Positions 8,923-63,071 of a DNA stretch of 64,000 nt are shown piece by piece. The translations under genes and the position numbers were made by a program. The notes below the pieces were generated by a model. It was given only the letters and a program-made list of their open reading frames with translations. It did no database searches and was not told the DNA's origin. The stretch's first letter is position 1; each line of letters opens with the position of its first letter. The DNA is taken from contig NC_043003.1 of NCBI RefSeq assembly GCF_006345805.1, positions 23,560,001 to 23,624,000 on the forward strand, given 5' to 3'. Origin of the DNA: Octopus sinensis. Taxonomy: Eukaryota.

Positions 8923-8987
<65 letters not shown>

Positions 8988-8988
8988 C

Positions 8989-9200
8989 TATGTAGTCCCA
9001 AGGTTTAAAAACAACTTTTTTATTTATTTATTTATTTATTTTTTTAATGTATTAGACATTCACTAGTACAACACCAAAAAAAAAGAAGAAACACCCCCCC
9101 CCCAATATATGGCACAGAACTTCCAACCTGTTGTCTCTTGAGGTCTCTGGGTGAGACTTGGAGCCAACTTGTACGACATAAAGCAAAAGTCAAACATAGA
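8989..9200 (+). mobile_element. Extreme 3' end (stop codon and 3' UTR) of a Dong-like element
   Basis: Begins CTATGTAG, matching the ...SM* ORF end of the other copies. Contains a CTTGAGG-TCTC-TGGG-TGAGAC-TTGG stem-loop resembling the other 3' UTRs. Flanked by TAA. Confidence 0.5.
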
Positions 9201-9291
9201 ATATAATAATAATATAATAATAATAATAAATAATAAGAAGAAGAAGAAGAAGAAGAAGAAGAAAAGAAAGAGAAGAAAAAGAAGAAGAAGA

Positions 9292-9357
<66 letters not shown>

Positions 9358-9370
9358 CACTAACAATAAT

Positions 9371-9904
9371 ATGCCCTGATGCAGTACCACACAGTGGCTC
9401 TCATGGCTTCTGGTCTTAACTGATTGGAAGTGTTATCATGTACATTGTTTTGTCTTGGTATAAAAGATGGGCTACAACAAAATATTCAATACAACAGATT
9501 TGCTTGGAAGTTGTTTGACCTTAACCAGTTGAACATGTCCCTTAGTGGCTGATGATATGTGTATATCTGACAACGAGCAGAAGTTGTTTGTGGCGGGGGG
9601 CATCATAGCCGTGTGTTGAAAGGAATACTTGGGGGTTTGGATAATTCGTTCAACATCCTTAAACAATCCTTATTCAGGGACCTTTTTGAGCAGGATGGGC
9701 TACATGACCAGAAGAAAATTCTAAGTGGGCCCCACCTGCAAGGTCATGCACTGTTTGTCTTGATATGAGATCACCATGTCGCGCACATATGGTTGTGATG
9801 CATGTGTCTGGTGTACCCTTATCAGACGGGTAGTCATGATGGGTATACTGGGCTTCGTATATTTTACCCCAGTGTCACTTTCATGGCATGCACTGCTCTC
9901 TCAC
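9371..9904 (+). mobile_element. TAA-embedded non-coding element, copy 1 (internal ~23-bp deletion)
   Basis: ATGCCCTGATGCAGTACC...GCATGCACTGCTCTCTCAC; highly similar to 25845-26400 and 61731-62287. Confidence 0.9.
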
Positions 9905-9949
<45 letters not shown>

Positions 9950-9965
9950 TGATAATAATAATAAT

Positions 9966-10030
<65 letters not shown>

Positions 10031-10031
<1 letters not shown>

Positions 10032-10180
10032 GCACTACTAGGAACTGCACGCATCCTACGTAGAACACTTTCCATACAGTAACCATCAGAGCATCACAAC
10101 AAATCACAGCACATACCTAAGGCACACAAAGCTGCGCTCGGTAGTGAAGTTAAAGCACGCTATAAAAATCAAACTACTGA
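10031..10180 (+). mobile_element. 5'-truncated Dong/R4-like 3' end
   Basis: Translates as ALLGTARILRRTLSIQ*, homologous to the ORF C-termini IVLTGTSHVLRRALSM* and IVLTSTAHILRKTLSM*. Followed by a short 3' UTR and (TAA)n. Confidence 0.8.
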
Positions 10181-10343
10181 ATAATAATAATAATAATAAT
10201 ATAATAATAATAATAATAATAATAGTAATAGTAATAATAATAATAATCATAATAATATAATTATAATAATAATAATAATATATAATAATAATAATAATAA
10301 TAATACTATAGTAATAGTAAAATAATAATAATAATAATCTACA

Positions 10344-18721: not shown

Positions 18722-19552
18722 TTTCTTATCTCTTTATTGCCCACAAGGGGCTAAACATAGAGGGGGCATATAAAGGGATTAAGTCGATTACATCGACCCC
18801 AGTGCGTAACTGGTACTTTATTTATCGACCCCGAAAGGATGAAAGGCAAAGTCGACCTCGGGGAAATTTGAACTCAGAACGTAGCGACAGACGAAATACC
18901 TAATTCTTTACTACCCACAAGGGGCTAAACATAGAGGGGACAAACAAAGACAGTCAAACGGATTAAGTCGATTACATCGACTCCAGTGAGTAACTGGTAT
19001 TTAATTTATCGACCCCGAAAGGATGAAAGGCAAAGTCGGCCTCGGCGGAATTTGAACTCAGAACGTAACGACAGACGAAATACCGCTAAGCATTTCGCTC
19101 GGCGTGCTAAAGTTTCTGCCTGCTCGCCGCCTTAGAAGTGCGAATATTCTTATCTACTCTTGCCTCAGGGCCCGAAATGTAGATCGAATCCAGTATGCAG
19201 CTGATATTTAATTTAACGACACCGAAATGATGAAAAACAAAGTCCATATCGGCGGAATTTCAACTCAGAACCTAAAACAGACGAAATACCACCAAGCATT
19301 TCGCCCGGCATGCTAAGCTTTCTGTAAGGTCGCTGCCTTAGAAGTGCGAATTTTCTTTTCTACTTTACTTTGGGGAGGTGGCCAGTCAATTAGATCGACC
19401 CCAGTACGCTACTGGTACTTGATTTATCGATTCCGAAACGATGAAAGGCAAAGTCGACCTCGACGGAATTTGAACTCAGAACGTAAAGACAGACGAAATA
19501 TCGGTAAGCATTTTGCCCGGCGTGCTAACATTTTTGACAGCTCGCCACCTTC
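18722..19552 (-). mobile_element. Four head-to-tail copies of SINE family B (tRNA head, Nin/Deu-like central domain)
   Basis: Repeated GGCGGCGAGCTGGCAG...GAGTTCAAATTCCGCCGAGGTCGACTTTGCCTTTCATCCTTTCGGGGTCGAT at ~18722-18900, 18901-19133, 19165-19340 and 19375-19552. The Nin/Deu assignment is from recalled consensus, not an alignment. Confidence 0.85.
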
Positions 19553-20593: not shown

Positions 20594-20769
20594 TCGCATT
20601 TGTATTTGGTTTGCAAGAATCTTGATGTGTGTTCGAGTCCTGATAGAAATACTATTGAACCTTGGGGAGAGAGGCATTATACCGGTAATAATAAACACAC
20701 GCACTGGTTAGGGAGATTGCTAGTTAACGAGTTATTTACAACTGGTAATTATTTTATACACCTCGAAAT

Positions 20770-20884
20770 GTAGGTGAGGCAAAGTCGAACTCCCCGAAAT
20801 TTGAACTTCGAACACGAAGACGGACGAAATGACAGCAAACATTTCCTTCCGCATGTGAACGATTCTGCTAGCTCACCGCCTTAG
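20770..20884 (-). mobile_element. SINE family B 5' fragment
   Basis: AAGGCGGTGAGCTAGCAGAATCGTT...GTTCAAATTTCGGGGAGTTCGACTTTGCC on the minus strand. Confidence 0.75.
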
Positions 20885-21651: not shown

Positions 21652-21704
<53 letters not shown>

Positions 21705-22000
21705 TATGTGACTACACATAAAACAATATCATTGATGATGATGGTGGTGATGGTGATGGTGATGATGATAATGATGATGGTAATGGTGGTGATAATGATG
21801 ATAGTGATAATAATGGTGATGATAATAACAATAATAAGCCGACTACGGCTGCTATAATGGTACGATTATAATTGTAACGGCAATGATGGCCGTCTCCCCA
21901 CGAGCCAACCAAAGCTAAAAAATGATAACATTATCGTAGCACCAAAATGTTTTTGGAAACAAAAAGGAAAACTAAATCAGTATACCAAATCGCTTGTCCT

Positions 22001-25000
22001 ATGGTTAATCTGGAAGCGCGACCCCAGGGAAGAGCCAGCCTGGGATCGAAAAGTCATCAACTGGCACAAACTCTTCTCCGAATACGGACATGGATGGTCA
22101 CTTGAACGGGAAATCCCCCAACTCGAGCCCTCCAAGTTCACCACCACAACCACCACAGAAAGAAAAATGTAAGCGGAACAAATGGACCCGAGAAGAGTAT
22201 AAAGAAGTAATATACGCTTATTACTATGCATTAGGTAGGCCATCTCAAGAGAGACACACCGCAAACTCTTACAGTATATGGAGAACACGGAATCAAGACA
22301 GTAGGCCCTATTTGGACGAGAACAAATTAGCAAATGTGAAGAGGGATATCCTTAGAAATAACAGACTCACAGCCAGTGAAATAAGTGCGATCAAGCACGC
22401 AACGGAAAATGACATAAATATAAGACACAAAGGAAATGAAGAATCAGATGAACAGTATAGCCCGCCACGAGGCTTAATTGAAAGACTGCCATCTGACCAA
22501 AGTACGCAAAGGCATGAAGATACAAGAAATTCTATTGTACCTGTTAAAGATAGCCAGGAAAACGAAAAAAACAACAGTAACTGAAGATCTCGCATTTGCT
22601 GAAGAACACAGAGAGTCTATGGCAGAAATGAGGCAGAAAATCCTGAATACACTTGAAGTTGTAAGACATACAAGTATGAATGATAGAGAACCACTTCATA
22701 AACTCTCAAATACAAACCAAAATAAAAGACAAATCCAAATTGGCAACTATGTAACAAATGAAATAATACGAGAATTAAAACCTGATTTTACTGAGTTAAA
22801 TGAAATTATTTACGCTTCTGCTAGGGCAATTGAAACCAGCTGTATGCCCCCGAAAAAACAAAGAAAACAAAACCTGGGAAGAAATCAAACCTGGAGAAGT
22901 AAAATTGAAAAAGAGATTGAATTTATGAGAGGGAAAATATCAATATTAAATGAACTAATATGTGGAAATGATGTAAGATCCAGAACAGGAAGAAAGATGA
23001 AGAGAAAATTTGGATCCTCACCAAGAGAAGAACTGATATCAATAAAAGAAACGCTGAAACAAAAAGTCCAAGCAAAAGCCCAAAGAATACGAAGATTTGA
23101 GAAGAGAAACAAGTTTTACAAGCAAAATAAGCTGTTCACATCCAATGCCAAAAAATTCTACAGAGAAATAGGGAAGGAGAAAGTAACCGTTAAAGACCCC
23201 CCTCCCATGGAAGAAGTTCAAAACTTTTGGAAAAGTATTTGGAGTGACAAGAAGACATACAACATAAATGCAGACTGGATTATACAAACTGAAGGATCCT
23301 ACCAAAATTTACAACAAGCATGGGAAGACATCACAATAGCAGACCTAAGAAAGGCACTCACGAATGCCCATAATTGGAAATCCCCCGGTAAAGATAGGGT
23401 GCCGAATTTCTGGCCCGCATCGCCCCCATGCGCACACGGTAAGCTAGTTCAGCTGCTCAATGGAATTATGAGAGACCCAAAGAAAACACCTGAATGGTTA
23501 GCAAGTGGCATTACTTACCTACTCCCAAAGAATAACGAAACCAACCTTCCAAAAAACTATCGGCCTATAACCTGTCTATCCACCACGTATAAAATCCTAA
23601 CATCTATCCTGGCGGAGAAAACATATGCATTCATGGAGAAGAACGATATTTTCCCCATTGAACAAAAAGGGTGCCGCCGAGGCTCTTACGGATGCAAAGA
23701 TCAACTGCTAATCAATCGTATGATCCTTGAGAACTGTCACAACAAGCGCAGAAATCTCAGCACCGCATGGATTGACTATAAAAAGGCCTTCGACAGTATA
23801 CCGCATCCATGGATCTTGAGATCGCTGGACATCTTCAAAATTTCCCCTGTGATTTCAAACTTCCTGAAGCACAATATGTCGTTGTGGAATACGAATCTCC
23901 AATTATACCACTCAAATGGAGTACTTGCCTCAGAAAATATAAACATCAACTGTGGAATTTTTCAAGGTGACTCACTTTCACCTTTAATATTCTGCATAGC
24001 CCTAATACCCCTTACAAGTGAATTAAACAGAACAGGGTATGGGTATAAAATTGCCAATAAAAAAATAAGCCATCTATTTTATATGGATGACTTAAAACTT
24101 TATGGTAAAGACAATAATGAACTTGAAGGCCTATTGCGCACTGTGAAAGCATTCAGCGATGACATCGGGATGGAGTTTGGACTTGAGAAGTGTGCCAAGG
24201 CCACTTTCCAGAAAGGGAAAGTGAAGACCACAAATTCAGTCGTGTTAGATGTTGACACAGTCATAAGAGAGCTTGAGCAAGAACAAACATACAAATATTT
24301 AGGGATAAATGAAGGCTCTGGTATTCAGCATGCAAGCATGAAAGAGAAGATCAGGAAGGAATGTTATAGGAGAGTTCGTGCAGTCCTGAAATCTGAACTA
24401 AATGCACGTAACAAGGTGTTAGCTATAAATTCCTTAGCAGTTCCAGTTGTTACTTATAGCTACAATGTGTTGAACTGGAATATGAGTGAAGTAAAAAATA
24501 TAGATAGGAAAATACGCAAGCTGCTGAGTTGTAATAGGATGCACCACCCAAAGGCAGACGTAGATCGCCTTTACCTTCCCAGAGCCCAAGGAGGTCGAGG
24601 CCTGATCCAATTTGAACTAGCTTACAAAACAACCACAATTGGACTGGCCAAATATCTCGAAATATCGAATGACTGGATGCTAAAACTAGTGGAAAATCAC
24701 GAGAGACGAAAGAAGCTTCGTTCTATCATAAAGGAAAGCAAAAAATTTGCTATTGATCTCGTGCAGGATACCCAAACAGAACAACCCGAGGGAAGTACGG
24801 AAATTATTGTTGCAAAGAAGGTGAAAATAATGGCAACGAAAAAAGCGCACGAGCAATTGGCTGATAGGTGGGAGGAGAAACCTCTGCACGGCAAATATGT
24901 GACCCGCAGCAAACAAGCTGATGTTGACCAGAAGCAAACCCATCAGTGGCTACGGAGCTCAGGGCTAAAAGCAGGGAGCGAAGGTTTCATCCTGGCTGCT

Positions 25001-25796
25001 CAAGATCAAAGCCTATTAACCCGGAACTACCAGGCCAATGTGATGAAAAATTGAGCAGACCCAAAATGCCGATTCTGCAACGACATGATTGAAATAGTGG
25101 ACCACCTAATCTCTGGATGTAAAGTCTTAGCTCCAGTGGAGTATAAATTAAGACATGACAGAGTTGGCCAATATCTACACTGGCTAATAAGTCGGCATTA
25201 CAATATCAAAACTGCCGACAAGTGGTATAATCACCACCCTGAGGCTGTAACTGAAGGAGAAAATGTAACCATTCTGTGGGACTTTCCAATACATACAGAC
25301 CGAACCATCAAGGCCAATAAACCAGATATTGTTGTGAAAGACCAAAACAATAAAGTTTGCTTATTGATCGACATGAGCATCCCCTGTGATCATAATATCT
25401 CAGCGAAAGAGTTTGACAAGCTCAGAAAATATAAAGACCTACTCATTGAAATTGAGAAAATGTGGCATCTCAAGGCGGTTACAATACCAGTGACCGTAGG
25501 AGCACTAGGAATGATCAAGAAGGGAACCGAAAATTATATGAGAATGATCCCTGGCTTACCATCCCTGCAAGAAGTGCAAAAGATTGTCTTAACTGGTACA
25601 TCACACGTATTGAGAAGAGCATTGTCGATGTGAGAACTGTTGCTGCTCATGTATTTTAATTTAACTTTAAAAAAAAAATGAACGAACTATTGAGTTTGGT
25701 TTAATGGCCTACCAATGTATACTATGAGTTTCTTTGCCCTAGGAGTCGGGAAGACACTCGGCAAGAAATGGAAGCAAATTTGAAAGAAGAAAAAAA

Positions 25797-25797
<1 letters not shown>
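22001..25797 (+). mobile_element. Near-full-length R4/Dong-clade RLE-type non-LTR retrotransposon between (TAA)n arrays
   Basis: Single disrupted ORF, ~165-bp 3' UTR and (TAA)n tail from 25798. A (TAA)n tract lies upstream at ~21650-21705. The true 5' boundary is uncertain. Confidence 0.93.
22090..25633 (+). pseudogene. Dong/R4 polyprotein: N-terminal domain, reverse transcriptase, CCHC knuckle, PD-(D/E)xK restriction-like endonuclease
   Basis: RT motifs KSPGKDRV, NYRPITCL, EQKGCRRG, WIDYKKAFDS, GIFQGDSLSP and YMDD; CRFC-x8-H-x4-C; RHD, KPDIVV, LIDMSIP and KLRKYKDL. One frameshift near the A-run at ~22560-22584 and one in-frame TGA at 25052-25054 separate the three track ORFs. Confidence 0.93.
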
Positions 25798-25844
<47 letters not shown>

Positions 25845-25845
<1 letters not shown>

Positions 25846-26400
25846 TGCCCTGATGCAGTAGCAGGCAGTGGCTCTCATGGCTTCTCGTCTTAACTGATTT
25901 TGGAGTGTGATCATGTACATTGTTTTCTCTTGGTATAAAAGATGGGCTACAGCAAATATTCTGCTCAATATTACAGATTTGCTTGTCAATTATTTGACCT
26001 TAACTAGTTGAGCATGTCCCTTAGTGGCTGACGATATGTGCATCTCTGATCACAAGCAGAAGTAGTGGGGGAGCATGATAACCATGCTTTGTGATGGATT
26101 CTTTGGGGTTTGAATAATTCACCACTGGAAACACAAGTGTTTCGTTCAACATCCTTAAACAACCCTTATTCAGGGACCTTTTGAGCGGGATGGGTTACTC
26201 GACGAGAAAGAAATTCTAAGTGGGCCCCACCTGCAAGGTCATGTACTGTTTATCTTGATATGAGATCACCATGTCGTGCACATATGGTTGTGATGCATTT
26301 TCCTAGTGTACCCTTATCAGACGGGTAGTCATGATGGGTATACTGGGCTTCGTATATTTACCCCAGTGTCACTTTGATAGCATGCACTGCTTTCTCACTC
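25845..26400 (+). mobile_element. TAA-embedded non-coding element, copy 2
   Basis: Same sequence as 9371-9904; sits in the poly(TAA) tail of the Dong element. Confidence 0.9.
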
Positions 26401-26424
26401 AGTAATAATAATAACAACAACAAC

Positions 26425-26455
<31 letters not shown>

Positions 26456-26490
26456 TAATAATAATAATAATAATAATAATATTAATAATG

Positions 26491-26523
<33 letters not shown>

Positions 26524-26625: not shown

Positions 26626-26905
26626 TATACAAAAAATTCTATAATTATGAATATAATTATTATTTTTAGGGTTCAGCAAAATTTGCTTCACCACATACCG
26701 AAATTTAGAAATAGCAGTTAAACTACTATTTTACTACTATAAGATATCTCTTTATCTGCGTGAGTTGTTGAGTACTGCTGTCTGAGAGATATCTATGGTA
26801 GTAAAATAGTAGTTTAATTGATATTTCTAAATTTCGGTATGTAGTGAAGCAAATTTTTCTGAACCCTAATTATAATTATATTCATAAATATAGAAATTTT
26901 GTATA
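26626..26905. mobile_element. Fold-back element, arms ~26626-26750 and ~26786-26905, with high arm identity
   Basis: TAGGGTTCAGCAAAATTTGCTTCACCACATACCGAAATTTAGAAATA versus TATTTCTAAATTTCGGTATGTAGTGAAGCAAATTTTTCTGAACCCTA. Confidence 0.85.
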
Positions 26906-32239: not shown

Positions 32240-32442
32240 TTCAAATTTTGGTATAAGGCCAGCAGGTTTGGGAAAGGGGTAAGTTGATTACATCGACCCC
32301 AAGGGTTCAAATCATAATTATTTTATCGACTCGGAAAGGTTAAGTCGACCTTGACGAAATTTGAACTCAGAACGTAAAGCTGGACGAAATGTCACTAAAC
32401 ATTCTGGCAAGCCTGCTAACGATTCTGTCAACTTGTCGCCCA
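32240..32442 (-). mobile_element. SINE family B copy
   Basis: TCGACCTTGACGAAATTTGAACTCAGAACGTA block on the plus strand. Confidence 0.75.
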
Positions 32443-36020: not shown

Positions 36021-36946
36021 AATTAAAGTACTAATCACGTACTGAGGTCAATAATTTCAACTCCCTACTCTTATCAAAATTATCAAAGTCCCTGTACGAA
36101 AAGCAGAAACCATCGTCGTCATCATGGTCATTATCATTATTATTCCAATCTTGTAGGGTATTGGTGTTTTACTCGCTCGGTTCCTTACTAGATCTAATAT
36201 GACGACCATTGTGTACGTCCTCTCTCTTCTCTCTTTCTTGCTCTGTCAGCCTGTGTGTCTCTCATTCTGTCTGTCCCCCCCTCTCTCTCTAAATATATAT
36301 ATTTAGTGGAGGCAGCACCATGATCGTAACATGGGGTTCCTATTCCTGGACCGGGCGATGCGTTGTGTTCTTGAGCAAAACTGTCAAAGTTGGTTCGGAT
36401 TCTTGCAAGACTGTGGTTTGGACTAAAGCTTCCGAAAGGCTCAGTTGGCATTGTTATACGGGGCAAGAAATTAAGTCTGCCACTCACACAGGAAATGGAT
36501 AAATTTGATTTCAGAAAGCAAAGTCTCGGAGACAATGCTAGAAGACATTGGTTGTGATGTTCTTTGAATACCGGCTTGAACTTGGTCATGGACCCAGACG
36601 AAAATGAAAGACATGTTTAGGCTCGTCAGGATTCGAACTCAGTATGTCAGTTTATATACTTAATCTATTTTTACTTGCGTCAAAGAATATATTCGTTACA
36701 TTATTATTATTATAGATTATGTCTTCATCTTTGCGTGCAGAACATGCAATTCAGGCCGTCTCTGTAGAAGGAATCTCCGACGCGCTATTAAAGATTTCAA
36801 GAATTTTCATTCTGTGAATTCGTTTAATGTCAAGTTTATTATCCTAAATATGCGGAGTATCACTTGAATCCCGAGTGCATTTATATCTCGCATCTAATTT
36901 CTAGCTTTCCGTTTTAATTGTTAATATTAGCACACAGGCAGTGACC

Positions 36947-37140
36947 TGGCAGAATCGTTGGCACGGCAGGAACAGTGTTTAGCCGCTATTCGTCGGTGTA
37001 TACGTTCTGACGTCAAATTCACACGCGGTCGATTTTACCTTTCATCGTTTCAAGATCGATAAAATAAATCCTAATTGATTACCGGGATCGATGTAATCGC
37101 CTCATCCCCTCATCCGAAATTGATGGCCTTGTGCCAAAAT
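36947..37140 (+). mobile_element. SINE family B, diverged copy
   Basis: GGCAGTGACCTGGCAGAATCGTTGGCAC...GGTCGATTTTACCTTTCATC. Confidence 0.7.
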
Positions 37141-38849: not shown

Positions 38850-39496
38850 TTTTTTAAAGAATGAAGAAGTTGACAATCTAAATAATCTCATAATCCAGAA
38901 ATTTCCAGGTGAAAACATATACTCTGAGGAGTATTAATTTCGTTGCAGAAGATCAACAATCTGCACTCTATCCTCCTGAATTTCGAGATTTTCTTAATAT
39001 AAGTAGCATGCCACCGCACATTATCAAATTAAAAACAGGTGTTACTATAATGTGGCTAAGAGACTTAGATCGGAAAAAGTGGCACTGCAATGGCGTATGT
39101 TATAGAGTGTTATCGGTGTCGGATAATATGATCACTGCAAGTAAAATAACTGGTATCGATGCAGGACGCACACTTTTGATTCCCTGCATTATTCTGCAAC
39201 CATCTGATACTGATTTGCCCTTTACTTTGAAAAGACGCCCATTTCCAGTGAGACTAGCTTTCGCGATGTCTATAAACAAAAGTCAAGGACAAAGCCTTTC
39301 TAAGTTCGACATCTACATGTCTGCGCCCGTATTTACTCAAGGCCAGTTATATGTCGCTCTTAGCAAAGTTGAGGATTCAGTAAATCTTAAAATATTTGCT
39401 GATGAAGAAGAATTTATCAGATCAGGAACAAGCAGACGTCATAATGAAAACGTAAGAAGACTTACGCGTAATGTTGTCTACACGGAAATAGTGTAA
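38850..39496 (+). pseudogene. Helitron RepHel / PIF1-like helicase C-terminal fragment
   Basis: LKNEEVDNLNN (upstream, frameshifted), LKRRPFPVRLAFAMSINKSQGQSL and VFTQGQLYVALSKV; no N-terminal Rep domain in the window. Confidence 0.85.
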
Positions 39497-41111: not shown

Positions 41112-41139
41112 ATAAATGTATATATATATATATATATAT

Positions 41140-41835
41140 AAAATTAATTAAGGGTAGAAATTGATATTAGTCAATTAAAACCAGTGGTCTAGCATATTAA
41201 AAAGAATCCGAAAATTAAAATATTTATATATACCAATTAAGGACTGAACACGAAAAGTGGACAGTCAACATGCTAGATATAGACGTCAAATCACCATTCT
41301 CCACAAAGATTATGTTCTCAAAAAAATAAAATTCAGCACAAACCAAAGCAATAAATAAGACAAATGAAAATATACGAAATGAAATAATCACCTGTGTACT
41401 GATCAGTTTCAGTTATTAATATCCGCAAGGTTATCTGTAACTTCGTCAGCACAGTCTGTTATGAACATAATTTGCTGGACTAGATGCAAAAAACGATACC
41501 GGAGTTTCGCATGCATAAAGTACAACCGATTAAGTTCGAATGTATCTTTCAAATGCCTTTAGTTTTGGCGCGCTGAGATCCGAAAACCAGCTAGCAGCTA
41601 ATAATTAGCAGCAGTCAATTTATCGGTTTAAGAACATATATTTTATATTAAAAATTAATTAAGGGTAGAAATTTATATTAGTCAATTAAAACCAGTGGTC
41701 TAGCATATTAAAAAGAATCCGAAGATTAAAATATTTATATATACCAATTAAGGACTGAACAAGAAAAATGGACAGTCAACATGCTAGATATAGACGTCAA
41801 ATCGCCATTCTCCACAAAGATTATGTTCTCAAAAA

Positions 41836-41838
<3 letters not shown>
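41140..41838 (-). mobile_element. R-U-R partial tandem element (period ~511 bp) inserted in (TA)n and carrying a hammerhead; Penelope-pLTR/retrozyme-like
   Basis: ~190-bp direct repeats at 41140-41328 and 41651-41838 with few differences; hammerhead in the intervening segment. Confidence 0.75.
41392..41454 (-). ncRNA. Fully canonical type I hammerhead ribozyme
   Basis: Minus strand CTGTG-CTGACGA-AGTTA(22 nt)TAACT-GAAA-CTGATCAG-TA-CACAG. All core residues are intact, stem III is the palindrome ACTGATCAGT, and predicted cleavage is between 41397 and 41396. Confidence 0.88.
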
Positions 41839-43621: not shown

Positions 43622-43865
43622 AAAGGCGGCGAGCTGGCGGAAACGTTAGCACGCCGGTCGAAATGCTTAGCAGTATTTCGTCTGCTGCTAGCTACGTTCT
43701 GAGTTCAAATTCCACCGAGGTCGACTTTGCCTTTCATCCTTTCGGGGTCGATTAAATAAGTACCATTTACGCACTGGGGTCGATATAATCGACTTAATCC
43801 GATTGTCAAATGGCGGTGCCCCAGCATGGCCACAGCTCGTGAGCTGAAACTAGATAAAATAAAAT
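43622..43865 (+). mobile_element. SINE family B with alternative tail (GGCGGTGCCCCAGCATGGCCACAGCTCGTGAGCTGAAACTAG)
   Basis: Intact head and central domain; the same tail occurs at ~57703-57755. Confidence 0.85.
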
Positions 43866-45059: not shown

Positions 45060-45668
45060 TTTCTCAGCAAAGACAATGAACTCAGTGTTAGGAAGAAGCT
45101 AATCATGTTCCCTGAAGATAATGACTTACTCCTTGACACTCAGTATGACTTCTGCCCAAGAAGAAACTGCTTACACAGCTTCAGCATCATTATGACAGGG
45201 TGTTGATGCAAATAATGAGTCACTCTAACGTGAATGTGATGTATATCGATCTTGCAAATGACTCTAATAAGGTCGATCACGGGATAGTATGTCATAAACT
45301 ATGGAGACAATGCATAGTCGGAAAACTGGGAGGGTGGTTGAACGATTTCTTCAAAGACAGAAGCCAGACTCTGACAGCCTATGGAGCCTTCTGCAAGGAG
45401 ACAGTAGTAGCACGTGGAGTGTCTCAAGGAACTGCCTTGAAGTCATTGCTGTTTTTTGTAACATTTTCGAACATGTCACCAGTTACACAGGCATCCACAC
45501 TTATTGGTTATGCCGAGGTTGGCGTCACCAAGCTTTCGCATTGAGAGCCACCCGAACTGGACAATGCTGCACTGTTCGAAAGGTTCCATCCTTATCGTCT
45601 AGACTAAGCAATATATGCCACAACAGCGTGGGATTCAAGGACCCACAGCTATTTAATATCTTGCCAAA

Positions 45669-45672
<4 letters not shown>
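45060..45672 (+). pseudogene. CR1-clade LINE ORF2 remnant (RT core fused to C-terminus by deletion)
   Basis: NVMYIDLANDSNKVDHGIVCHKL, GKLGGWLNDFFKDRSQ, VARGVSQGT and NSVGFKDPQLFNILP. Confidence 0.75.
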
Positions 45673-45876: not shown

Positions 45877-47114
45877 TACAGACATGCAGGAAGTAAATAG
45901 ACACGTTTAATCTTTAAAATGTTGATCTAAGCGTCTTAATATGCTTTGAGTGGTGTAGAATTTATAATGTAATTATTCTTTTTCATTCCAGGTGCCATTA
46001 CATTAAACATTTGCGAAGAGTAACCATGCTACGCACAAAAAAATTCAGCAGAACTGTCAGATTTTCAAAGAGGTCGTATTTTTGGGCAATCTGAGGCTGG
46101 TCTTAGCCAGCGAAAAATTGCTGAAAATTCATCTTGCTATTGTTAATAGAATTATTGTACAATTGAAAAGACAAGGAAAATAATCAACAGATTCTCGTCC
46201 CGGCCGACCTGGGTCCTGGAAAAGGAAGCTTCGCTGTTTGAAGAGAATTATGGAAAACGAACTCCGTTCGAAGGCTTCTGGCATTACAAAACAGCTAGAA
46301 GTTAATTCAAGGACGTGTGTTACATATTTGCATAAGCTTGAGTATTATGAATTAGCACATAGAAGAAAACTTCTCCTTCAACCAAGTAATATCATGAAAA
46401 GAAATAAATGGGCTAAGCTCAGTTCATTTTAGAATAGAGTGATTTTCTGAGATGAATCCAGATTTGCATTATTTTCAGACAGTGGATTTGTTTGGGTCTG
46501 GAGGCTTCCCAATCAAGAATTTAATTTGAAACGACTACGACCAACTGTGAAACATGGCGGTATCTTTGTAATGGTATGGAGAGCTGTCACCAGCAATGGT
46601 CGTTCTGAGCTGTGTTGGAAACAAACTCTGAAAAATACATGGAAATACTTAAGCAAGGACTACTTCCGATGTATTCACACGATAACATAACGAAAAATGA
46701 AATTTTTTTTTATGGAAGATGGGGCTCCATGCCACACAGCAAAAAGAAATGGCTGACTAAAAATGAGATCAAAAAGCTTCCATGGCCGAGCCAATCTCCT
46801 GACATGAACCCAATTGAAAATCTTTGGAGCATACTAGATATAGCTATACGAAAGACTCGACAGAAACCTAAATCTAAAGATGAATCATTTCGATTCTTGC
46901 GTGAAAAGTGGGCAGAAATTCTACAAGAGACAATCACAAAGCTTATCAGTTCAATGGCAAAAAGTGATTCTGAATTATAAATTGCAAAGGGAATGTCAAC
47001 TAAATACTAAAGTATGTAGTCCTACCTATCGATTACATTTCAATTGTTCGCTCTGCATATTAAATAAAAGATTTTGAAAATTAAAGTTGTCTATTTACTT
47101 CCTGCATGTCTGTG
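45877..47114 (+). mobile_element. Complete-length (1.24 kb) but decayed Tc1-family DNA transposon
   Basis: TIRs ACAGACATGCAGGAAGTAAATAGACA at both ends with flanking TA. Frameshifted transposase: ELSDFQRGRIFG, VIFSDESRF, MEDGAPCHTA and WPSQSPDMNPIENLW (DDE triad of Tc1 type). Confidence 0.92.
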
Positions 47115-47174: not shown

Positions 47175-47320
47175 TTAGGGTGGGCTAGTCGATTACACCG
47201 ACTCCAGTGTTTCACTGCTGCTTTATTTCTCGAACCCGAAAGGATGACTGGTAAAGTCGACCGCGGTTGAATTTGAACTCAGAACGCGGCGATGGGCGAA
47301 AACGCGCTAAGAATTTCGTC
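47175..47320 (-). mobile_element. SINE family B copy
   Basis: GTCGACCGCGGTTGAATTTGAACTCAGAACG block. Confidence 0.7.
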
Positions 47321-48889: not shown

Positions 48890-49320
48890 TTTAAATTTTG
48901 GCACAACGTTACCAATCCCAGGTTTGCAGATAAGACGATTACATCGACTCCAGCGCTCAACCGATACGTATTTTATCGACCCCGAAAAGATGAAACACAA
49001 AATCGATCTCGGCGGATGTTGAACTCATAAATTAAGGACTATCGTAACTTCGTTAAACAATATAGCCGCTGCCCTGATTAATCTGCAGGCTCAACGCCTT
49101 AGTAGTCCAATCTACTCTAAACATGAGGTCTGAAACTTTCAGATAAAGGTGCTAGTCAATTAATTGTCCCCAGTAGGCAACTGGTAGTGATTTTATCGAC
49201 CCCGAAAGGACGAAATGCCAAAAAATTAACCTCAGCAGAATTTGAACACAGAATGTAAAGACGGACAAAATGTCGCTAACCATTTCGGCCGGCGTGCTAA
49301 CGATTCTGCTAGATCGTACC

Positions 49321-49388
<68 letters not shown>

Positions 49389-49412
49389 AACAACAACAAC
49401 AACAACAACAAC

Positions 49413-49444
<32 letters not shown>

Positions 49445-49882
49445 TAATAATAATAATAATAATGATAGATAATATTAATGGTTTCAAATTTTGCCACAGG
49501 GGCAGCAATTTTGGAGGAGGGGATAAATGGATTATATCGACCCCAGTCTTTCACTGGTACTCGATTTATAGAGCCTGAAAGGATGAATGGCAATGTCGAT
49601 CACGGCGAAATTTGAACTCCGAACGTAGCGAGAGTATTTCGTCGTGCGTGCTAACGACTCTGCCATTTTGCCGTCTTAATAATCTTTTCTACTACAGGCA
49701 CAGGGCCTGAAATTTAGGGCCAGAGTTGCCAGTCGATTAAATCCACCCCATGCAACTGGTACTTAATTTATCGACCCCCAAAGGATGAACTGCACCGTCG
49801 ACCGCGGTGGAATTTGAACTCAGAACATAGAGACAGACGAAATACCGCTAAGCATTTCGCCCGACCTGCTAACGATTCGCCA
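48890..49882 (-). mobile_element. Cluster of four co-oriented SINE family B copies around a (TAA)n tract
   Basis: Copies at ~48890-49030, 49150-49322, 49480-49678 and 49690-49882. Confidence 0.8.
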
Positions 49883-50201
49883 TTTTAATAATGATAACAA
49901 TACAATAAAAGCATTTCTGTGCTACTAGATTTCGAGGCGGAGGGTTATGTGAAAATGTCTAGTCTATGATTTATAAATTTATATATGGGCATAGTCGTAA
50001 ATAATTATGATTAAAATACGTAGGTAACCCCTTTAGATTAAGCTAAGCATTACGAATCAATTTCCTATAATAGAATAATTTATTTTATATTCATGTATCT
50101 TCCAGCAAAGTTATTACATACAAAATGTTTCTACATCCGCTGTAGACTGTTAGCTAATAGGTACAGATATATAATGTAACCTCTCTCTCTCTTACTATAT
50201 C

Positions 50202-53535: not shown

Positions 53536-53632
53536 AATATGTAGGGTAGCGAATATTTTTAGAAATTTCACTGTCAGTGGCCTAGCATGTATAAAAAGTT
53601 AATAGAAAACATACTCTCAATATAAAATAGTA

Positions 53633-53718
53633 TACATTTAAACACAAGGGAAACTATCTTTAACAGGTAATTTTACACGCTTACCTGTTAAAGGTAGTTT
53701 CTCTTATGTTTAAATGTA
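53633..53718. other. 38-bp-arm hairpin with 10-nt loop
   Basis: TACATTTAAACACAAGGGAAACTATCTTTAACAGGTAA / TTACCTGTTAAAGGTAGTTTCTCTTATGTTTAAATGTA; 35 of 38 Watson-Crick pairs. Confidence 0.8.
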
Positions 53719-53755
53719 CTCTATTTGATAGCTATCTAGCTATCTAGCTAGATAA

Positions 53756-55749: not shown

Positions 55750-57792
55750 ACTTGTCTTCTACTAAGGCCTTGTGTGTGGCTTTGGTGGACAGAAACCGAA
55801 AGAAGCCCGTCGTATATATACTCTTTACTCTTTTACTTGTTTCAGTCATTTGACTGCGGCCATGCTGGAGCACTGCCTTTAATCGAGCAACTCGACCCCG
55901 GGACTTATTCTTTTTGTAAGCCCAGTACTTATTCTATCGGTCTCTTTTGCCGAACCGCCAAGTAACGGGGACATAAACACACCAGCATCGGTTGTCAAGC
56001 AATGCTAGGGGGACAAACACAGACACACAAACACACACACATACATATATATACATATATACAACAGGCTTCTTTCAGTTTCCGTCTACCAAATACACTC
56101 ACAAGGCATTGGTCGGCCCGGGGCTATAGCAGAAGACACTTGCCCAAGATGCCACGCAGTGGGACTGAACCCGGAACCATGTGGTTGGTAAGCAAGCTAC
56201 TTACCACACAGCCACTCCTGCGCCTATATATTTATACGTATATATTTATACATATGTGTCTGTATTTGTACCCCCAACATCGCTTGACAACCGATGCTGG
56301 TGTGTTTACGTCAACGTAAACACACCGATAGAATAAGTACTAGGCTTACACAGAATAAGTCCTAGGGTCGATTTGCTCGACTAAGGGCGGTGCCCCAGCG
56401 TAGCCACCGTCAAATGACTGAAACAAGTAAAAGAGTAAAAGAGTATATATACACATGCATACCTATATACATACATACATACATGTATACATGCATACAT
56501 ACGTTCATACTCCCATACATACATATATACATACATACGTACGTACGTACATACATACATACATACATACGTACGTACATACATACATACATGCATGCAT
56601 GCATACATACGTTCATACTTCCATACATACATATATACATACATACATACATACGTACGTACATACATACATACATACGTACGTACGTATGTACGTACAT
56701 ACATACACACATACATACATACATACATACATACATCCATACATACATATATACATACATACATATACACATACATACATACATACATACATACATACAT
56801 GCAAGCATGCATACATACATACATACATACATACATACATACATACATACATACATACATACATACATACATACATAAAATCTCATATTCACTTACTTGC
56901 ATTCGTTGAACTGATGCCTGCAAGTGTTATGCCACGAATCCATACGGGATTGGTTCCAAGAATGGTGACTTATTTTGGGATACTGGCGTGTTTTTTCACA
57001 AGACCTGAAGGATGTCTCCTGAAACAAACGCTGATTTCTTTAGCCTTTGCTTCGGCTTTCATTTTGCTGTTTTTAGTCATTCTCTAATGGAAATCCAGTT
57101 CACCCACACACTTACACAGATACACCCTCGCCGCACACGCCACACACATATCTCTTTCTATATATATATATATATACATATTCATGCAAATAGAAATGTG
57201 TTTATATTAAATATATATATTTATATATATATGTACAATAAATCTCAGAGCGTGTTATAAACAGTAGCTACAACATATCGTGACGTATATTTGACACCCC
57301 ACGCCACCCCTATATATATACATATATATGTATGTATGTATGCATACGAGGTGGTACAGGCGCAGGAGTGGCTGTGTGGTAAGAACCTTGCTTACCAGCC
57401 AAATAGTTCAGGGTTCAGTCCCACTGTGTGTCACCTTGTGCAAATGTCTTCTACTATAGCCTCGGGCCGACTAAACACTTGCGAGTAGATTTGGTAGACG
57501 GAAACTGAAAGTATCATGTATATTTGTGTATGTGTGTGTGTGTGTGTGTGTGTGTTTGCATCTGTTTGTCCACTACCATCGCCTGACAACTGATGGTGGC
57601 GTAACTTAACGGTTCGCCAAAATTGACCGATAGAATTAGTAATAGCCTTACAAAGTTTACATCCTAGGGTCGATGACTGAAACAAATAAAAGAATATATA
57701 GGATGGCGGTGCCCCAGCATGGCCACAGCTCGTGAGCTGAAACTAGATAAAATTAAATTAATTAAAATATATCTACATACATATATATATAT

Positions 57793-57849
<57 letters not shown>

Positions 57850-58285
57850 CATATATATGTATATGTATACACTCTTTACTCTTGTACTTGTTTCAGTCAT
57901 TTGGCTGTGACCATGCTGGAGCACCGCCTTTAGTCGAGGAAATGGACCCCAGGTCTTATTCTTTGTAAGCCTAGTACTTATTCTATCGGTCTCTTTTGCC
58001 GAACTGCTAAGTTACGGGGACGTAAACATACCAGCATTGGTTGTCAAGCGATGTTGGGGAGACAAACACAGACACACAAACATATACACACACATGCTTA
58101 TATATATATACATATATACGACGGGCTTCTTTCAGTTTCTGTCTACCAAATCCACTCACAACGCTTTAGTCGGACCGAGGCTATAGTAGAAGACACTTGT
58201 ACAAGTTGCCACGCAGTGGGACTGAACCCGAAACCATGTGGTTGGTAAGCAAGCAACTATCCACACAACCACTCATACGCCTATA
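55750..58285. mobile_element. Cluster of C/D composite SINEs in alternating orientation
   Basis: ~55750-55815(+), 55825-56225(-), 56245-56440(+), 57356-57700(+) and 57865-58285(-). Confidence 0.85.
56455..56876. repeat. (ACAT)n array with a duplicated ~100-bp higher-order unit
   Basis: CATGCATACATACGTTCATACT(C/T)CCATACATACATATATACATAC occurs at ~56490 and ~56598. Confidence 0.9.
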
Positions 58286-59678: not shown

Positions 59679-59903
59679 AAGGCGGCGAGCTGGCAGAAAC
59701 GTTAGCACGCTGGGCGAAATGCTTAGGGGTATTTCGTCTGAGTTCAAATTCTGCCGTGGTCGACTTTGCCATTCATCATTTCGGGGTTGATAAATTTAAG
59801 TACCAGTTACGCACTGAGGTCGATGTAATCGACTTAATCCGTTTGTCTGTCCTTGTTTGTCCCCTCTATGTTTAGCCCCATGTGGGCAATAAAGAAATAA
59901 GAA
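59679..59903 (+). mobile_element. Near-full-length SINE family B
   Basis: Head, central domain and GTTTGTCTGTCCTTGTTTGTCCCCTCTATGTTTAGCCCC tail. Confidence 0.88.
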
Positions 59904-60156
59904 ATCCATTTGCTTATCACTTGAGAAATCAGCTGCTCTCATGTATATGTTGTCTCTTCGCTGCCATGAAAGAATAGAGCCCTAATTAATTGCATACTCT
60001 ATACACAGCACATTTGCAACAAGCAACATAATATTTCTTACATATGAGAAGTGGTGCTAGGTGCTACTACTACACTGAATATAATCTTAGATGTCTAGGA
60101 GAGGAAAACTAAGAGATTTTACAAACTTACGTTCAATAAATCCATTAGAATAAAAA

Positions 60157-60534: not shown

Positions 60535-61502
60535 ACACCGTTGGAAAAATAGTACTTAAAGAGTCCTCTATTTGTCTAATCTGCTGTTGCTATAAACATT
60601 TGCATTTCTGAATTGAAAAGAAATTATATCTCTCGTCAACTGATAGCGTGCTCCCATTTCCCCACCAGTCTTCAATTATTTTATCTCGACCTGCGCTAAA
60701 CCTAATCTCCCGTAACTTCTATTGAAACTCAAAATTTTCACTCGGCTATTATTCTCAGTGGAGCACAAAACAAAGAAATATTTCTCAATCGCTGTAGCAA
60801 TTACAAAAGATGTTGATATATGTTTCAAATATATTGATAATCTATTGGAATATAAAAATATGGAAATAAATGTATAAAGAATGAAGATGGTCAACGCAAA
60901 AACAACCGATATAATAATAGGTATCTCGGAATTCGTATAAAGTGAAACAATAACATATATAATAAAATTTTCTCTCAGACTAAACATATATGCAACATAA
61001 ATGAAAAAAGTGCACTTCCTCAATGCTCTTATGCATACACTCTTTGTCACCGAAACAAAACGAAATATTCCCGATGTTTAAAGATGAAAGCTATGTTCAG
61101 TTACAAGGTTAGCTATGATATAAATTTCAGACGACTGTTCTTATAATAAAGATTACTATAATCGTCTCTGCTATAAGCACAATATCTAAAATCCGTGATT
61201 GACTGGTACTTATTTCATCGACTCCGAAAGTTAAAGCTGACTTCGGCAGTCAGGGTGAGCAGGATGTGTGGGGTGCTCTGGGTGGAACGCGCTCCTATTG
61301 AGTAAGGTTGTAGTAAAAGATTTTTAACTATTTTTGTTTTGTATTGTTTACACGTTTTCTGTTTTAAACATCTCTTGTCCCTTGTTTTGTATTCTTCCTA
61401 CATGTTCTTGAGTTCGGCCCTTGTCGCCAAATAAGAAAGGATTGCAGGTAGAGAGTTTCTTCTTTTTCTTCTCCTTCTTCTTCTTCTTCTTCTTCTTCTT
61501 CT

Positions 61503-61596: not shown

Positions 61597-61644
<48 letters not shown>

Positions 61645-61695
61645 CATTATTATTATTATATTATTATTTTATTGTTGTTGTTGTTGTTGTTGTTG

Positions 61696-61730
<35 letters not shown>

Positions 61731-62284
61731 GAGTGAGAGAGCAGTGCATGCCATCAAAGAGACACTGGGGTAAAATATACGAAGCCCAATATACCCATTA
61801 TGACTACCCCTCTGATACGGGTACACTAGGCACATGCATTACAACCATATGTGCGCGACATGGTGATCTCATATCAAGATAAACAGTACAGGACCTTACA
61901 GGTGGGGTCCAGTTAGAATTTTCTTCTGGTCGAGTAACCCATCCTGCTCAAAAGGTTCCTGAATGAGGGTTGTTTAAGGATGTTGAACGAAACACCCATG
62001 TTTCCAGAGGTGTATTATCCAAACCTCAAAGAATCCCTCCCAAAGCATGGCTATGATGCTCCCCCACTACTTCTGCTTGTGATCAGAGATGAACATATCG
62101 TCAGCCACAAAGGGACATGTTCAACTGGATAAGGTCAAATAATTGGAAGGCAAATCTGTGGTATTGAGCAGAATATTTGCTGTAGCCCATCTTTTACACA
62201 AAGACAAAACAATGTACATGATAACACTTCCAATCAGTTAAGATCAGAAGCTATGAGAGCCACCGCCTGGTACTGCATCGGGGC

Positions 62285-62287
<3 letters not shown>
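61731..62287 (-). mobile_element. TAA-embedded non-coding element, copy 3
   Basis: Reverse complement of 25845-26400, with (TAA)n on both sides on the minus strand. Confidence 0.9.
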
Positions 62288-62342
<55 letters not shown>

Positions 62343-63071
62343 GTCATTTACTTTTAATCTGCATGTTTGATGCAATCACTTGCCGGAGCACACCCAGCGC
62401 CCTAGGGCAAGTGAAGGTTAAGAATTGTTGAAATATAGCTGAAAGCTTGGGGAGGGGAAGTAGAGATATATCTCCATGTAATGCAAACACAAACATTTAC
62501 ATTGATAGGGTTTTTCTAAGGATGTGGGCAGTACTTGTTAGCACAATCTTTTGGATTTCCTTGAGACATGGTTTTCCAGGGATATTGTCTAGGTGTTTCT
62601 GACATCTCTTTTTTATCATACCTAGGGCACCTACAATAACAGGAACAGTTTTTGTTTTAAGATTCCACATCCTCTGTATTTCGATTTCCAGGTCCTTATA
62701 TTTACTAAGTTTGTCAAATTCCTTGACAGATACATTTTTATCAGTGGGGACGCTTACTTCTATTAGTCTGCAGGTATTTTCTTCCCTGTCTTTCACAATT
62801 ATGTCTGGTCGATTAGCCTTGATCGTTCTGTCAGTGTTGACTGGAAAATCCCAGAGGATGGTGACATCTTTACCTTCAACAACTGGCTGAGGATGGTGTT
62901 CATACCAGTTAGCAGGAGTGTCGGATTTGTAGTGTTACATATCTTCCAATGTATATACTGTCCTACCCTATCGTGGCGATTTTTGTATTCGTTTGGTGTC
63001 AGCACAGGACATCCCGAAACGAGATGGTATTGTTTCGTCAAATGTGTCACAGAATCTGCATTTAGGGTCAG
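62343..63071 (-). mobile_element. Second Dong/R4-clade element, 3' part (CCHC knuckle, endonuclease, 3' UTR), cut by the assembly gap
   Basis: DPKCRFC..HLVSGC, RHDRVGQYIHW, LIEVSVP, EFDKLSKYKDL and stop at 62497, with frameshifts; (TAA)n tail at 62288-62342. Confidence 0.9.

What the first reader, a model, noticed from the sequence alone, without database searches (positions are those of the whole stretch)
25845..26400. A ~555-bp ORF-less element that always sits in (TAA)n directly behind a Dong 3' end
Seen: three similar copies (9371, 25845, 61731) with near-identical ends. Each has TAA on both sides in the same polarity as Dong, and each lies 45-170 bp downstream of a Dong 3' UTR from a different Dong family. 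I see no tRNA A/B boxes and no tail shared with the Dong 3' UTRs. It has an internal TATAAAAG and a terminal ACTGGG/CCCAGT hairpin. Known: Dong elements target TAA repeats through an RLE endonuclease. Inference: this is a sequence-specific non-autonomous partner of Dong that is not a classical SINE.
Basis: partly seen in the sequence, partly recalled or inferred. Interest (0 to 1): 0.78.

Follow-up and report, generated by a model that had tools for sequence, protein, structure and literature searches.

The report
TAA-repeat-specific short retroposon beside Dong elements
An octopus-like genome carries a roughly 557-bp non-coding mobile repeat that lands only inside TAA microsatellites, in the same orientation as the TAA-targeting Dong retrotransposons next to it. 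It probably borrows the machinery of such an element, but the window's three copies cannot show which partner it uses.

Summary
Three full-length copies of an ORF-less repeat of about 557 bp lie at 9371-9906 (+), 25845-26402 (+) and 61730-62286 (-). They are 88-90% identical and share the same ends. Each has (TAA)n on both sides in one polarity, and each lies 47-160 bp downstream of a Dong-type 3' end.

For this I used a covariance model of a 37-nt Dong 3' hairpin that I found conserved across species.

- No pol III head, ribozyme or terminal inverted repeats were found in the element. It also shares no sequence with the Dong copies here.
- It lacks the Dong 3' hairpin. Its best match scores 6.3 bits, against at least 15 bits for all 14 Dong tails examined.
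- It is therefore not a classical SINE, not an internally deleted Dong and not a piece of a Dong UTR.
- The best reading is a non-autonomous retroposon specific for TAA repeats.

"Always behind Dong" is not shown. With three copies it fits two families simply sharing one target. In another species, Dong copies themselves stack head to tail in TAA. Dong1 also looks younger than the copy behind it.

No further copies could be retrieved, so the partner remains inferred. This is a new member of a known kind, of moderate interest.

The parts
25845..26402 (+). Element copy c2 (558 bp, full length)
   Evidence: It is 90.3% identical to c3 and 88.4% to c1, with 4.2% copy-specific substitutions.
9371..9906 (+). 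Element copy c1 (536 bp). Relative to c2 and c3 it has a 23-bp and a 4-bp internal deletion and a 6-bp insertion.
   Evidence: It has 6.8% copy-specific substitutions.
61730..62286 (-). Element copy c3 (557 bp, full length, minus strand)
   Evidence: The TATA-like motif is mutated in this copy.
25798..25844 (+). Perfect (TAA)15 plus AA, between the Dong1 3' end and c2
26403..26521 (+). Imperfect (TAA)n tract downstream of c2, containing a (CAA)n block
21704..25797 (+). Dong1, a nearly full-length RT plus CCHC/RLE non-LTR element. It is flanked by TAA (21653-21703 and 25798 onward). It has one frameshift (about 22475-22582) and one in-frame stop (25052).
   Evidence: Pfam RVT_1 and no APE domain. 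Closest solved structures are R2 proteins. CCHC and KPD...D motifs are present.
25731..25767 (+). Dong1 3' UTR hairpin, 30 nt before the TAA tail
   Evidence: Alignment A4 and model R1, 42.1 bits.
62341..63071 (-). Dong2, the 3' part of a second Dong family. It is 62% identical in protein and 61% in DNA to Dong1. An assembly gap at 63072-63171 cuts it off.
62377..62413 (-). Dong2 3' UTR hairpin, 34 nt before the TAA tail
   Evidence: R1, 43.2 bits.
62287..62340 (-). Perfect (TAA)18 between the Dong2 3' end and c3
61599..61729 (-). (TAA)n/(CAA)n tract downstream of c3 on the minus strand
8987..9214 (+). Insert A, a 228-bp 5'-truncated Dong tail of a third family, upstream of c1. Its hairpin lies at 9131-9167.
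   Evidence: R1, 15.5 bits, E 0.14, 38 nt before TAA. It matches the L006 Dong tail at 73%.
9215..9370 (+). Mixed (TAA)n/(GAA)n tract between insert A and c1
10030..10181 (+). Insert B, a 152-bp insert within TAA downstream of c1. It is possibly another truncated Dong tail, with a weak hairpin at 10110-10146.
   Evidence: R1, 9.0 bits, E 7.1 (noise level), but 35 nt before TAA.
26301..26348 (+). Longest predicted stem-loop in the element's 3' part. The outer stem is CCTAGTGTACCC with GGGTATACTGGG, and the apical part reads GAC-GGGTA-GTC. It is only weakly Dong-like.
   Evidence: RNAalifold. R1 gives 6.3 bits, E 0.089 within the last 153 nt, and nothing in the window-wide search.

Best explanation
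The 557-bp unit is a non-autonomous, non-coding retroposon family of an octopod genome. It integrates by target-primed reverse transcription into (TAA)n microsatellites, always with its sense strand on the TAA strand. It encodes nothing, so it must borrow the endonuclease and reverse transcriptase of an autonomous LINE that nicks TAA repeats.

The Dong (R4-like, RLE-bearing) elements that fill the same tracts in the same orientation are the obvious candidates. Its 3' end runs straight into TAA repeats. A (UAA)n tail on the RNA could therefore pair with the nicked target and prime cDNA synthesis.

Its position just downstream of Dong 3' ends is a by-product. Both families use the same tracts, and those tracts become head-to-tail stacks of TAA-specific insertions.

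Shown: family status, exact ends, TAA flanks, fixed polarity, and the absence of an ORF, TIRs or a pol III head. Inferred: the RNA intermediate, TPRT, and Dong as the donor of the machinery.
For: - Three independent insertions. c2 and c3 are 90% identical, while the Dong pieces next to them are only 61% identical. This rules out a duplicated block or a co-mobilised unit.
- All three lie in TAA tracts, which make up 1.7% of the window, with the same polarity as four Dong tails.
- The 3' end is precise and is followed by TAA in a fixed phase. The 5' junction varies (TAAT, TAAAA or TAA before ATGCCC). Similar 5' junction variation was taken as a sign of TPRT for R2 SIDEs (PMC3414825).
- There are no TIRs, no conserved ORF, and no tRNA, 5S, 7SL, snRNA or ribozyme match.
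- The neighbours are RT plus CCHC/RLE elements flanked by TAA. Dong is documented to target TAA microsatellites (PMC3812793).
- Dong-R4 is abundant and recently active in Octopus (PMC13282606).
- A shared target has been used before to pair a non-autonomous family with a LINE, for SINEU-3 and Tx1-Mar (PMC4494074).
- Head-to-tail stacking in TAA is generic. Five Dong copies sit in tandem in L004.
Against: - There are only three copies, all from one 64-kb window. No further copy could be retrieved.
- The element shares no sequence with either Dong 3' UTR or with Dong1's 5' end.
- It lacks the covariation-supported Dong 3' hairpin. Its best match is 6.3 bits, against at least 15 bits for 14 of 14 Dong tails, including four that were not in the model.
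- R2-type proteins need sequences at the 3' end of their RNA to bind it and start TPRT (PMC3414825). Mobilisation by Dong without that hairpin therefore needs explaining.
- No empty site, no 5'-truncated copy and no transcript evidence is available.
Confidence: 0.55

Rival explanations
1. It is a non-autonomous retroposon, but its partner is a different LINE that makes or uses (TAA)n tails, not Dong. Annealing of the tail to TTA/TAA-rich nicks would explain the TAA flanks, and Dong would be only a neighbour in the same tracts.
For: The element lacks the Dong 3' hairpin and shows no Dong similarity. Non-Dong LINEs with TAA tails exist. In L001, an RT gene that follows an Exo_endo_phos (APE) gene ends at a TAA tract at 2131. 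The I element also ends in TAA repeats (PMC3747384).
Against: All three copies have at least 45 bp of TAA on the 5' side as well, which indicates real target specificity and not just a tail. No such LINE is visible in the window. The fixed polarity matches Dong.
Confidence: 0.17
2. The Dong tail, the (TAA)n and the element were inserted together. The reverse transcriptase copied the element RNA first and then jumped onto the 3' end of a Dong RNA, with its UAA tail, within one TPRT event. This would make the position behind Dong mechanistic and not coincidental.
For: The two well-defined spacers are pure and similar in length: (TAA)15 and (TAA)18. The upstream Dong pieces come from different families, as expected if any co-expressed Dong RNA can be the second template. 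Template jumps by R2 reverse transcriptase in vivo are documented (PMC3414825).
Against: Dong1 is full length with its own upstream TAA and only two disruptions, so it looks younger than c2, which has 4.2% private substitutions. The c1 spacer is about 160 bp and of mixed composition. Sequential insertion explains everything without an extra assumption. Three cases cannot test it.
Confidence: 0.08
3. The 557 bp is not a unit of its own. It is the 3' terminal part of a longer element, either the UTR of another autonomous LINE or a composite Dong, seen here as truncated copies.
For: Only three copies are available. LINE 3' ends are the most abundant LINE fragments.
Against: All three copies start at the same nucleotide, which random 5' truncation would not give. 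There is no coding remnant upstream, only TAA. The unit lacks the Dong 3' hairpin, so it is not a Dong UTR.
Confidence: 0.07
4. It is a DNA transposon derivative: a PIF/Harbinger-type MITE with a TAA/TTA target-site duplication, or a non-autonomous Helitron that happens to sit in TAA tracts.
For: From general knowledge, PIF/Harbinger elements duplicate TWA. A Helitron-type helicase fragment lies in the window at 38909-39496.
Against: There are no terminal inverted repeats; the best subterminal pair is 11 nt at 82%. The ends are ATGCC... and ...CTCA, not TC...CTRR. The polarity is fixed in 3 of 3 copies. The flanks are long TAA tracts and not single TAA triplets.
Confidence: 0.04

Closest known systems
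SINEU-3 with Tx1-Mar LINEs in crocodilians (Kojima 2015, PMC4494074)
   Same: A short non-autonomous retroposon family is assigned to a target-specific LINE because both share one insertion target. Copies often lie in tandem at the target.
   Different: SINEU has a U1/U2 snRNA-derived head, its partner has an APE-type endonuclease, and its target is a DNA transposon. The element here has no recognisable RNA-gene head, the candidate partner is RLE-type, and the target is a microsatellite.
R2 SIDEs, short internally deleted elements of Drosophila (Eickbush and Eickbush 2012, PMC3414825)
   Same: They are non-coding parasites of a site-specific RLE-type LINE. They share its target and orientation and show variable 5' junctions.
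   Different: SIDEs are made of the parent's own 5' ribozyme and 3' UTR. The element here shows no similarity to any Dong end available, no ribozyme match, and none of the conserved Dong 3' hairpin.
Dong / R4-clade non-LTR retrotransposons (Xiong and Eickbush 1993; Kojima and Fujiwara 2004, as cited in PMC3812793)
   Same: Insertion into (TAA)n in a fixed orientation, with the 3' end running into TAA repeats.
   Different: Dong is autonomous, about 4 kb long, with RT and RLE domains and a conserved 3' hairpin. The element is 557 bp with no ORF and no such hairpin.
Classical tRNA-derived SINEs, such as the abundant octopus SINE in this window
   Same: They are short, non-coding, LINE-dependent, and have many copies.
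   Different: The element has no A/B boxes, no LINE-derived tail could be identified, three conserved T4 runs would stop pol III, and insertion is strictly within TAA.

Membership tests
Classical SINE | A 5' head derived from tRNA, 7SL, 5S or snRNA, with an internal pol III promoter | tested here: not met
   ARAGORN finds no tRNA. Rfam finds nothing at gathering scores and nothing real at E up to 10 over c2. The best A-box match has 2 mismatches (235 of 1000 shuffles are as good) and the best B-box match has 4 (998 of 1000). T4 runs are conserved at about positions 78 and 334, with a third run near 450-510 whose position varies between copies.
Classical SINE | A 3' tail shared with the partner LINE | tested here: not met
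   Smith-Waterman against the Dong1 and Dong2 UTRs and inserts A and B gives z of 3.0 or less. The Dong hairpin model gives 6.3 bits, against at least 15 for Dong tails. Other LINE families of this genome could not be tested.
SIDE-like internally deleted derivative of Dong | Both ends identical or clearly homologous to the ends of the autonomous parent | tested here: not met
   There is no similarity to the Dong1 5' end or to either 3' UTR, and no HDV-like or other ribozyme match. Only two or three Dong families were available for comparison.
Target-specific non-autonomous retroposon (the SINEU-3/Tx1-Mar type of relationship) | The same insertion target and orientation as an autonomous LINE, in far more copies than chance allows (Kojima's criterion: more than 20% of flanks) | tested here: met
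   Three of three copies lie in (TAA)n on both sides, in Dong's polarity. TAA tracts are 1.7% of the window. The sample is only three copies.
Target-specific non-autonomous retroposon | Demonstrated dependence on the partner's proteins | not testable with these tools
   This needs a retrotransposition assay or genome-wide data on co-activity.
MITE (PIF/Harbinger-type, TAA target-site duplication) | Terminal inverted repeats and insertion in either orientation | tested here: not met
   The repeat finder reports no terminal inverted repeat. All three copies share one orientation.
Non-autonomous Helitron | A 5' TC, a 3' CTRR, and a hairpin 10-20 nt from the 3' end | tested here: not met
   The ends read ATGCC... 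and ...CTCACTCA. The nearest hairpin ends 32-34 nt from the 3' end.
Dong / R4-clade LINE (applies to the neighbours, not the element) | A single ORF with RT followed by CCHC and a PD-(D/E)XK restriction-like endonuclease, and no APE domain | tested here: met
   Pfam finds RVT_1 only. R2 proteins are the best PDB matches. The motifs CRFCNDMIEIVDHLISGC and KANKPDIVVKD...IDMS are in the C-terminal part, matching intact homologue P0001.
Dong / R4-clade LINE (neighbours) | Insertion in (TAA)n in a fixed orientation | tested here: met
   TAA lies on both sides of Dong1. TAA tails follow the Dong elements from other species in L001, L002, L004-L007 and L009.
Dong / R4-clade LINE (neighbours) | Phylogenetic placement inside the R4 clade and not the R2 clade | not tested
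   No reference R4/Dong protein set was available, so no tree was built.

The most novel reading that the evidence does not exclude
A stringent, RLE-type, site-specific LINE (Dong) is parasitised by a short RNA that copies neither of its ends and lacks its conserved 3' hairpin. The RNA would be recruited only through a (UAA)n tail pairing with the nicked TAA target, or through template jumping, which would also place it systematically behind Dong tails. That would be a new way to hijack an R2-like retrotransposon.
Probability: 0.15. Interest if true: 0.6.

Novelty: new member of a known kind. Interest (0 to 1): 0.4.

Why it matters
Site-specific RLE-type LINEs (R2, R4/Dong) are thought to recognise their own 3' UTR strictly, and few non-autonomous parasites of them are known. 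A TAA-specific passenger family without the Dong hairpin would show either a second, unrecognised TAA-targeting LINE in octopus or a looser template choice by Dong than assumed. The second possibility bears on current efforts to use R2-like enzymes for targeted insertion.

There is also a practical point for octopus genomics. The element explains part of the structure of long TAA microsatellites, which act as landing pads stacked with several families. It should be annotated as a family of its own and not as unknown or unclassified SINE. On present evidence it is a modest addition to a known category.

Tried and rejected
1. More copies from outside the window.
- Exact 22-23-mers from invariant parts of the element were scanned against metagenome contigs (twice), bacterial and archaeal genome contigs, and viral contigs. 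All scans returned nothing.
- A protein search with the stop-free stretches of 27 aa or more from the six reading frames of the consensus joined together, hoping for spurious ORF calls on other copies, also found nothing.
- The octopus proteins found are held without contigs, so no octopus DNA could be fetched.

2. Loci around Dong homologues (L001-L012).
- All come from other species. None contains the element.

3. Sequence similarity between the element and Dong1 (whole element, 5' end, 3' UTR), Dong2, inserts A and B, and the abundant SINE.
- None was found.

4. My own lead that the element's 3' stem-loop (GAC-GGGTA-GTC apex, CCC/GGG-closed outer stem) mimics the Dong hairpin.
- I tested it with a model built without the element, and it failed: 6.3 bits, below noise for the window.
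- I keep it only as a weak resemblance.

5. Other readings rejected.
- Segmental duplication of a Dong-TAA-element block, because divergence differs (61% against 90%).
- 3' transduction from one source locus, for the same reason.
- A TATA-driven transcript, because the box lies 90 nt inside the element and is lost in c3.
- A MITE or Helitron (and the end sequences).

6. An 883-bp ORF-less insert behind a Dong tail in L001.
- It has no second copy, so it says nothing about generality.

Full report
**What is there**

The window is AT-rich (34.6% G+C) and full of interspersed repeats. Its Helitron-type helicase fragment (38909-39496) is most similar to Octopus bimaculoides proteins (74% identity). 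The window also carries many copies of a short repeat that I recognise from memory as the common octopus SINE. I therefore treat the source as an octopod.

The reported repeat is real. Three copies exist: c1 at 9371-9906 (+), c2 at 25845-26402 (+) and c3 at 61730-62286 (-). blastn and a profile search at maximum sensitivity find nothing else, whole or truncated.

The copies are 88-90% identical (K2P 0.105-0.131) and share both termini to the nucleotide. No reading frame is conserved. Their G+C content is 43-44%, clearly above the surroundings.

**Flanks**

Each copy has (TAA)n on both sides, in the polarity of the element. Perfect TAA tracts make up 1.7% of the window, so three independent hits by chance have a probability of about 5e-6. 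The common polarity adds little on its own (p 0.125-0.25).

The 3' end (...CTCTCACTCA, plus or minus one base) runs into TAA in a constant phase. The 5' junction varies: TAAT, TAAAA or TAA before ATGCCC. Similar 5' junction variation was taken as a sign of target-primed reverse transcription for R2 SIDEs (PMC3414825).

**The neighbours are Dong-type elements**

The element at 21704-25797 encodes a reverse transcriptase (Pfam RVT_1, no APE domain). A C-terminal CCHC motif and a KPD...D restriction-like endonuclease motif follow it. R2 proteins are its closest solved relatives, and intact homologues of about 1240 aa have the same layout. TAA flanks it on both sides.

A second family is represented by a 3' fragment at 62341-63071 (-). 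Dong is known to target TAA microsatellites (Kojima and Fujiwara 2004, as cited in PMC3812793). Dong-R4 is among the most recently active LINE groups in Octopus vulgaris (PMC13282606). I did not build a tree, so placement in the R4 clade rests on domain order and target.

**A conserved Dong 3' hairpin, and what it shows**

I fetched Dong homologues from other species (L001-L012). Their 3' UTRs, though otherwise unalignable, share a 37-nt stem-loop 26-44 nt upstream of the TAA tail. It has an 8-bp outer stem closed by CC/GG, a 3-nt bulge, a 6-bp inner stem and an NGGNN pentaloop.

On ten tails the structure is 89% paired, and 11 of 14 pairs show compensatory changes. No shuffle out of 500 reaches this, and sliding the partners destroys it.

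A covariance model of these ten tails (R1) recovers divergent Dong tails that were left out of it. They score 15-18 bits in other loci.

In the window the third-best hit, after Dong1 and Dong2, is 9131-9167 (15.5 bits, E 0.14). It lies 38 nt before the TAA tract that precedes c1. That 228-bp insert also aligns with the tail of L006.

A weaker hit at 10110-10146 (9 bits) sits at the right distance from TAA downstream of c1. It may be a fourth tail.

**What the element is not**

- It is not a tRNA, 5S, 7SL or snRNA-headed SINE. ARAGORN and Rfam are negative, and A/B boxes are no better than in shuffled sequence.
- Three T4 runs on the sense strand would hinder pol III.
- It is not an internally deleted Dong. 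It shows no similarity to Dong1, Dong2 or the truncated tails.
- It is not a Dong UTR. I noticed that its longest 3' stem-loop has a Dong-like outline, so I tested this with the model built without it. It scores 6.3 bits, absent from the window-wide list and well below every true tail. I regard the resemblance as unproven.
- It has no terminal inverted repeats and no Helitron ends.
- The TATAAAAG motif lies 90 nt inside the unit and is lost in c3, so it cannot account for full-length copies.

**Is "always behind Dong" meaningful?**

The Dong pieces next to c2 and c3 are 61% identical, while the elements are 90% identical. The blocks were therefore neither duplicated nor mobilised as one unit from one source.

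Head-to-tail stacking in TAA is generic. L004, from another species, has five Dong copies in tandem separated by (TAA)5. At c1 there is probably a Dong tail downstream as well.

Dong1 has only one frameshift and one in-frame stop in 3.5 kb, whereas c2 carries 4.2% private substitutions. If rates are similar, Dong1 is the younger of the two and landed in front of the element. With three cases the adjacency is fully explained by two families using one target.

A co-insertion model remains possible but unneeded. In it, the reverse transcriptase jumps from the element RNA to a Dong RNA. The two pure spacers of 15 and 18 units are its only hint.

**Mechanism and confidence**

Best reading (0.55): a non-autonomous retroposon specific for TAA repeats. 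It would be mobilised in trans by a TAA-nicking LINE, most likely Dong, with a UAA tail pairing to the nicked target.

Main rival (0.17): the same, but with another TAA-tailed LINE as partner. Minor rivals are template-jump co-insertion, a fragment of a longer element, and a DNA transposon.

**Limits**

No additional copy could be obtained from any accessible collection. Copy number, truncation profile, empty sites and the partner's identity therefore remain open.

**Comparison and novelty**

The relationship resembles SINEU-3 with Tx1-Mar (PMC4494074) and R2 SIDEs (PMC3414825). The element differs in having no RNA-gene head and no part of its presumed partner. My literature searches found no description of a non-autonomous companion of Dong. 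I rate it a new member of a known kind, of moderate interest.

Noticed in passing
window 25731-25767 (+), 62377-62413 (-), 9131-9167 (+); L001 12773-12809 and 18708-18743; L002 4203-4239; L004 5550-5586, 9905-9941, 13273-13309 and 15127-15162; L005 13613-13649; L006 4440-4477; L007 4333-4370; L009 4083-4119: Dong-like elements from many species share a 37-nt 3' UTR stem-loop 26-44 nt before the TAA tail (about 60 nt in one L004 copy). It has an outer stem closed by CC/GG, an inner stem and an NGGNN pentaloop. Covariation is strong: 11 of 14 pairs are compensatory and no shuffle out of 500 reaches it. It is probably the RNA handle for the Dong protein. I do not know of a published description.
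   Followed up: yes
window 18731-19551 (+) and 48931-49890 (+); also 43623-43807 (-), 59679-59916 (-), 47187-47320, 32280-32440, 36936-37110 (-), 20740-20884: An abundant SINE-like family of about 170-220 bp, the common octopus SINE from memory, occurs in same-orientation tandem arrays of four or more units. Some units end in TAATAAT, and one array contains a 141-bp TAA tract (49322-49462). I did not examine whether it also prefers TAA.
   Followed up: partly
window 26403-26440 and 61640-61729: The TAA tracts downstream of c2 and c3, the two closest copies, both contain a (CAA)n block after a few TAA units. c1 does not. This may mean that part of the downstream microsatellite was copied from the source RNA as a tail.
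   Followed up: no
window 26626-26905: A stretch of about 280 bp is 83% self-complementary (a palindrome or hairpin-forming repeat). It lies just beyond the TAA tract downstream of c2. Similar self-inverted stretches lie at 1074-1596, 2332-2536, 53621-53730 and 57355-58285.
   Followed up: no
window 63072-63171: A run of 100 N (an assembly gap) cuts the second Dong copy. No Dong coding similarity is seen beyond it, so the length of that copy is unknown.
   Followed up: no
window 38909-39496 (+), 45200-45672 (+), 46612-46980 (+): Other transposon remnants are present. One is a Helitron-type Pif1 helicase fragment whose best hit is Octopus bimaculoides at 74%. By eye there are also an RT-like fragment and a mariner/Tc1-like transposase fragment.
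   Followed up: partly
L004 1-15162: In another species, five Dong copies lie head to tail in one orientation, separated by (TAA)5 tracts. The downstream copies are 5'-truncated. This is a clear case of repeated insertion into the tail of an earlier copy.
   Followed up: partly
L001 18877-19759: In another species, an 883-bp ORF-less insert lies between two TAA tracts directly behind a Dong tail. The layout matches the one studied here, but the sequence is unrelated and has no second copy in the loci held.
   Followed up: partly
window 41124-41325 and 41636-41836: Two 202-bp direct repeats, 95.5% identical, start 512 bp apart. They could be a small tandem duplication or LTR-like ends.
   Followed up: no
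window 9235-9292 and 61450-61598: (GAA)n blocks are embedded next to the TAA tracts at the c1 and c3 loci, showing that these microsatellites are compound and old.
   Followed up: no
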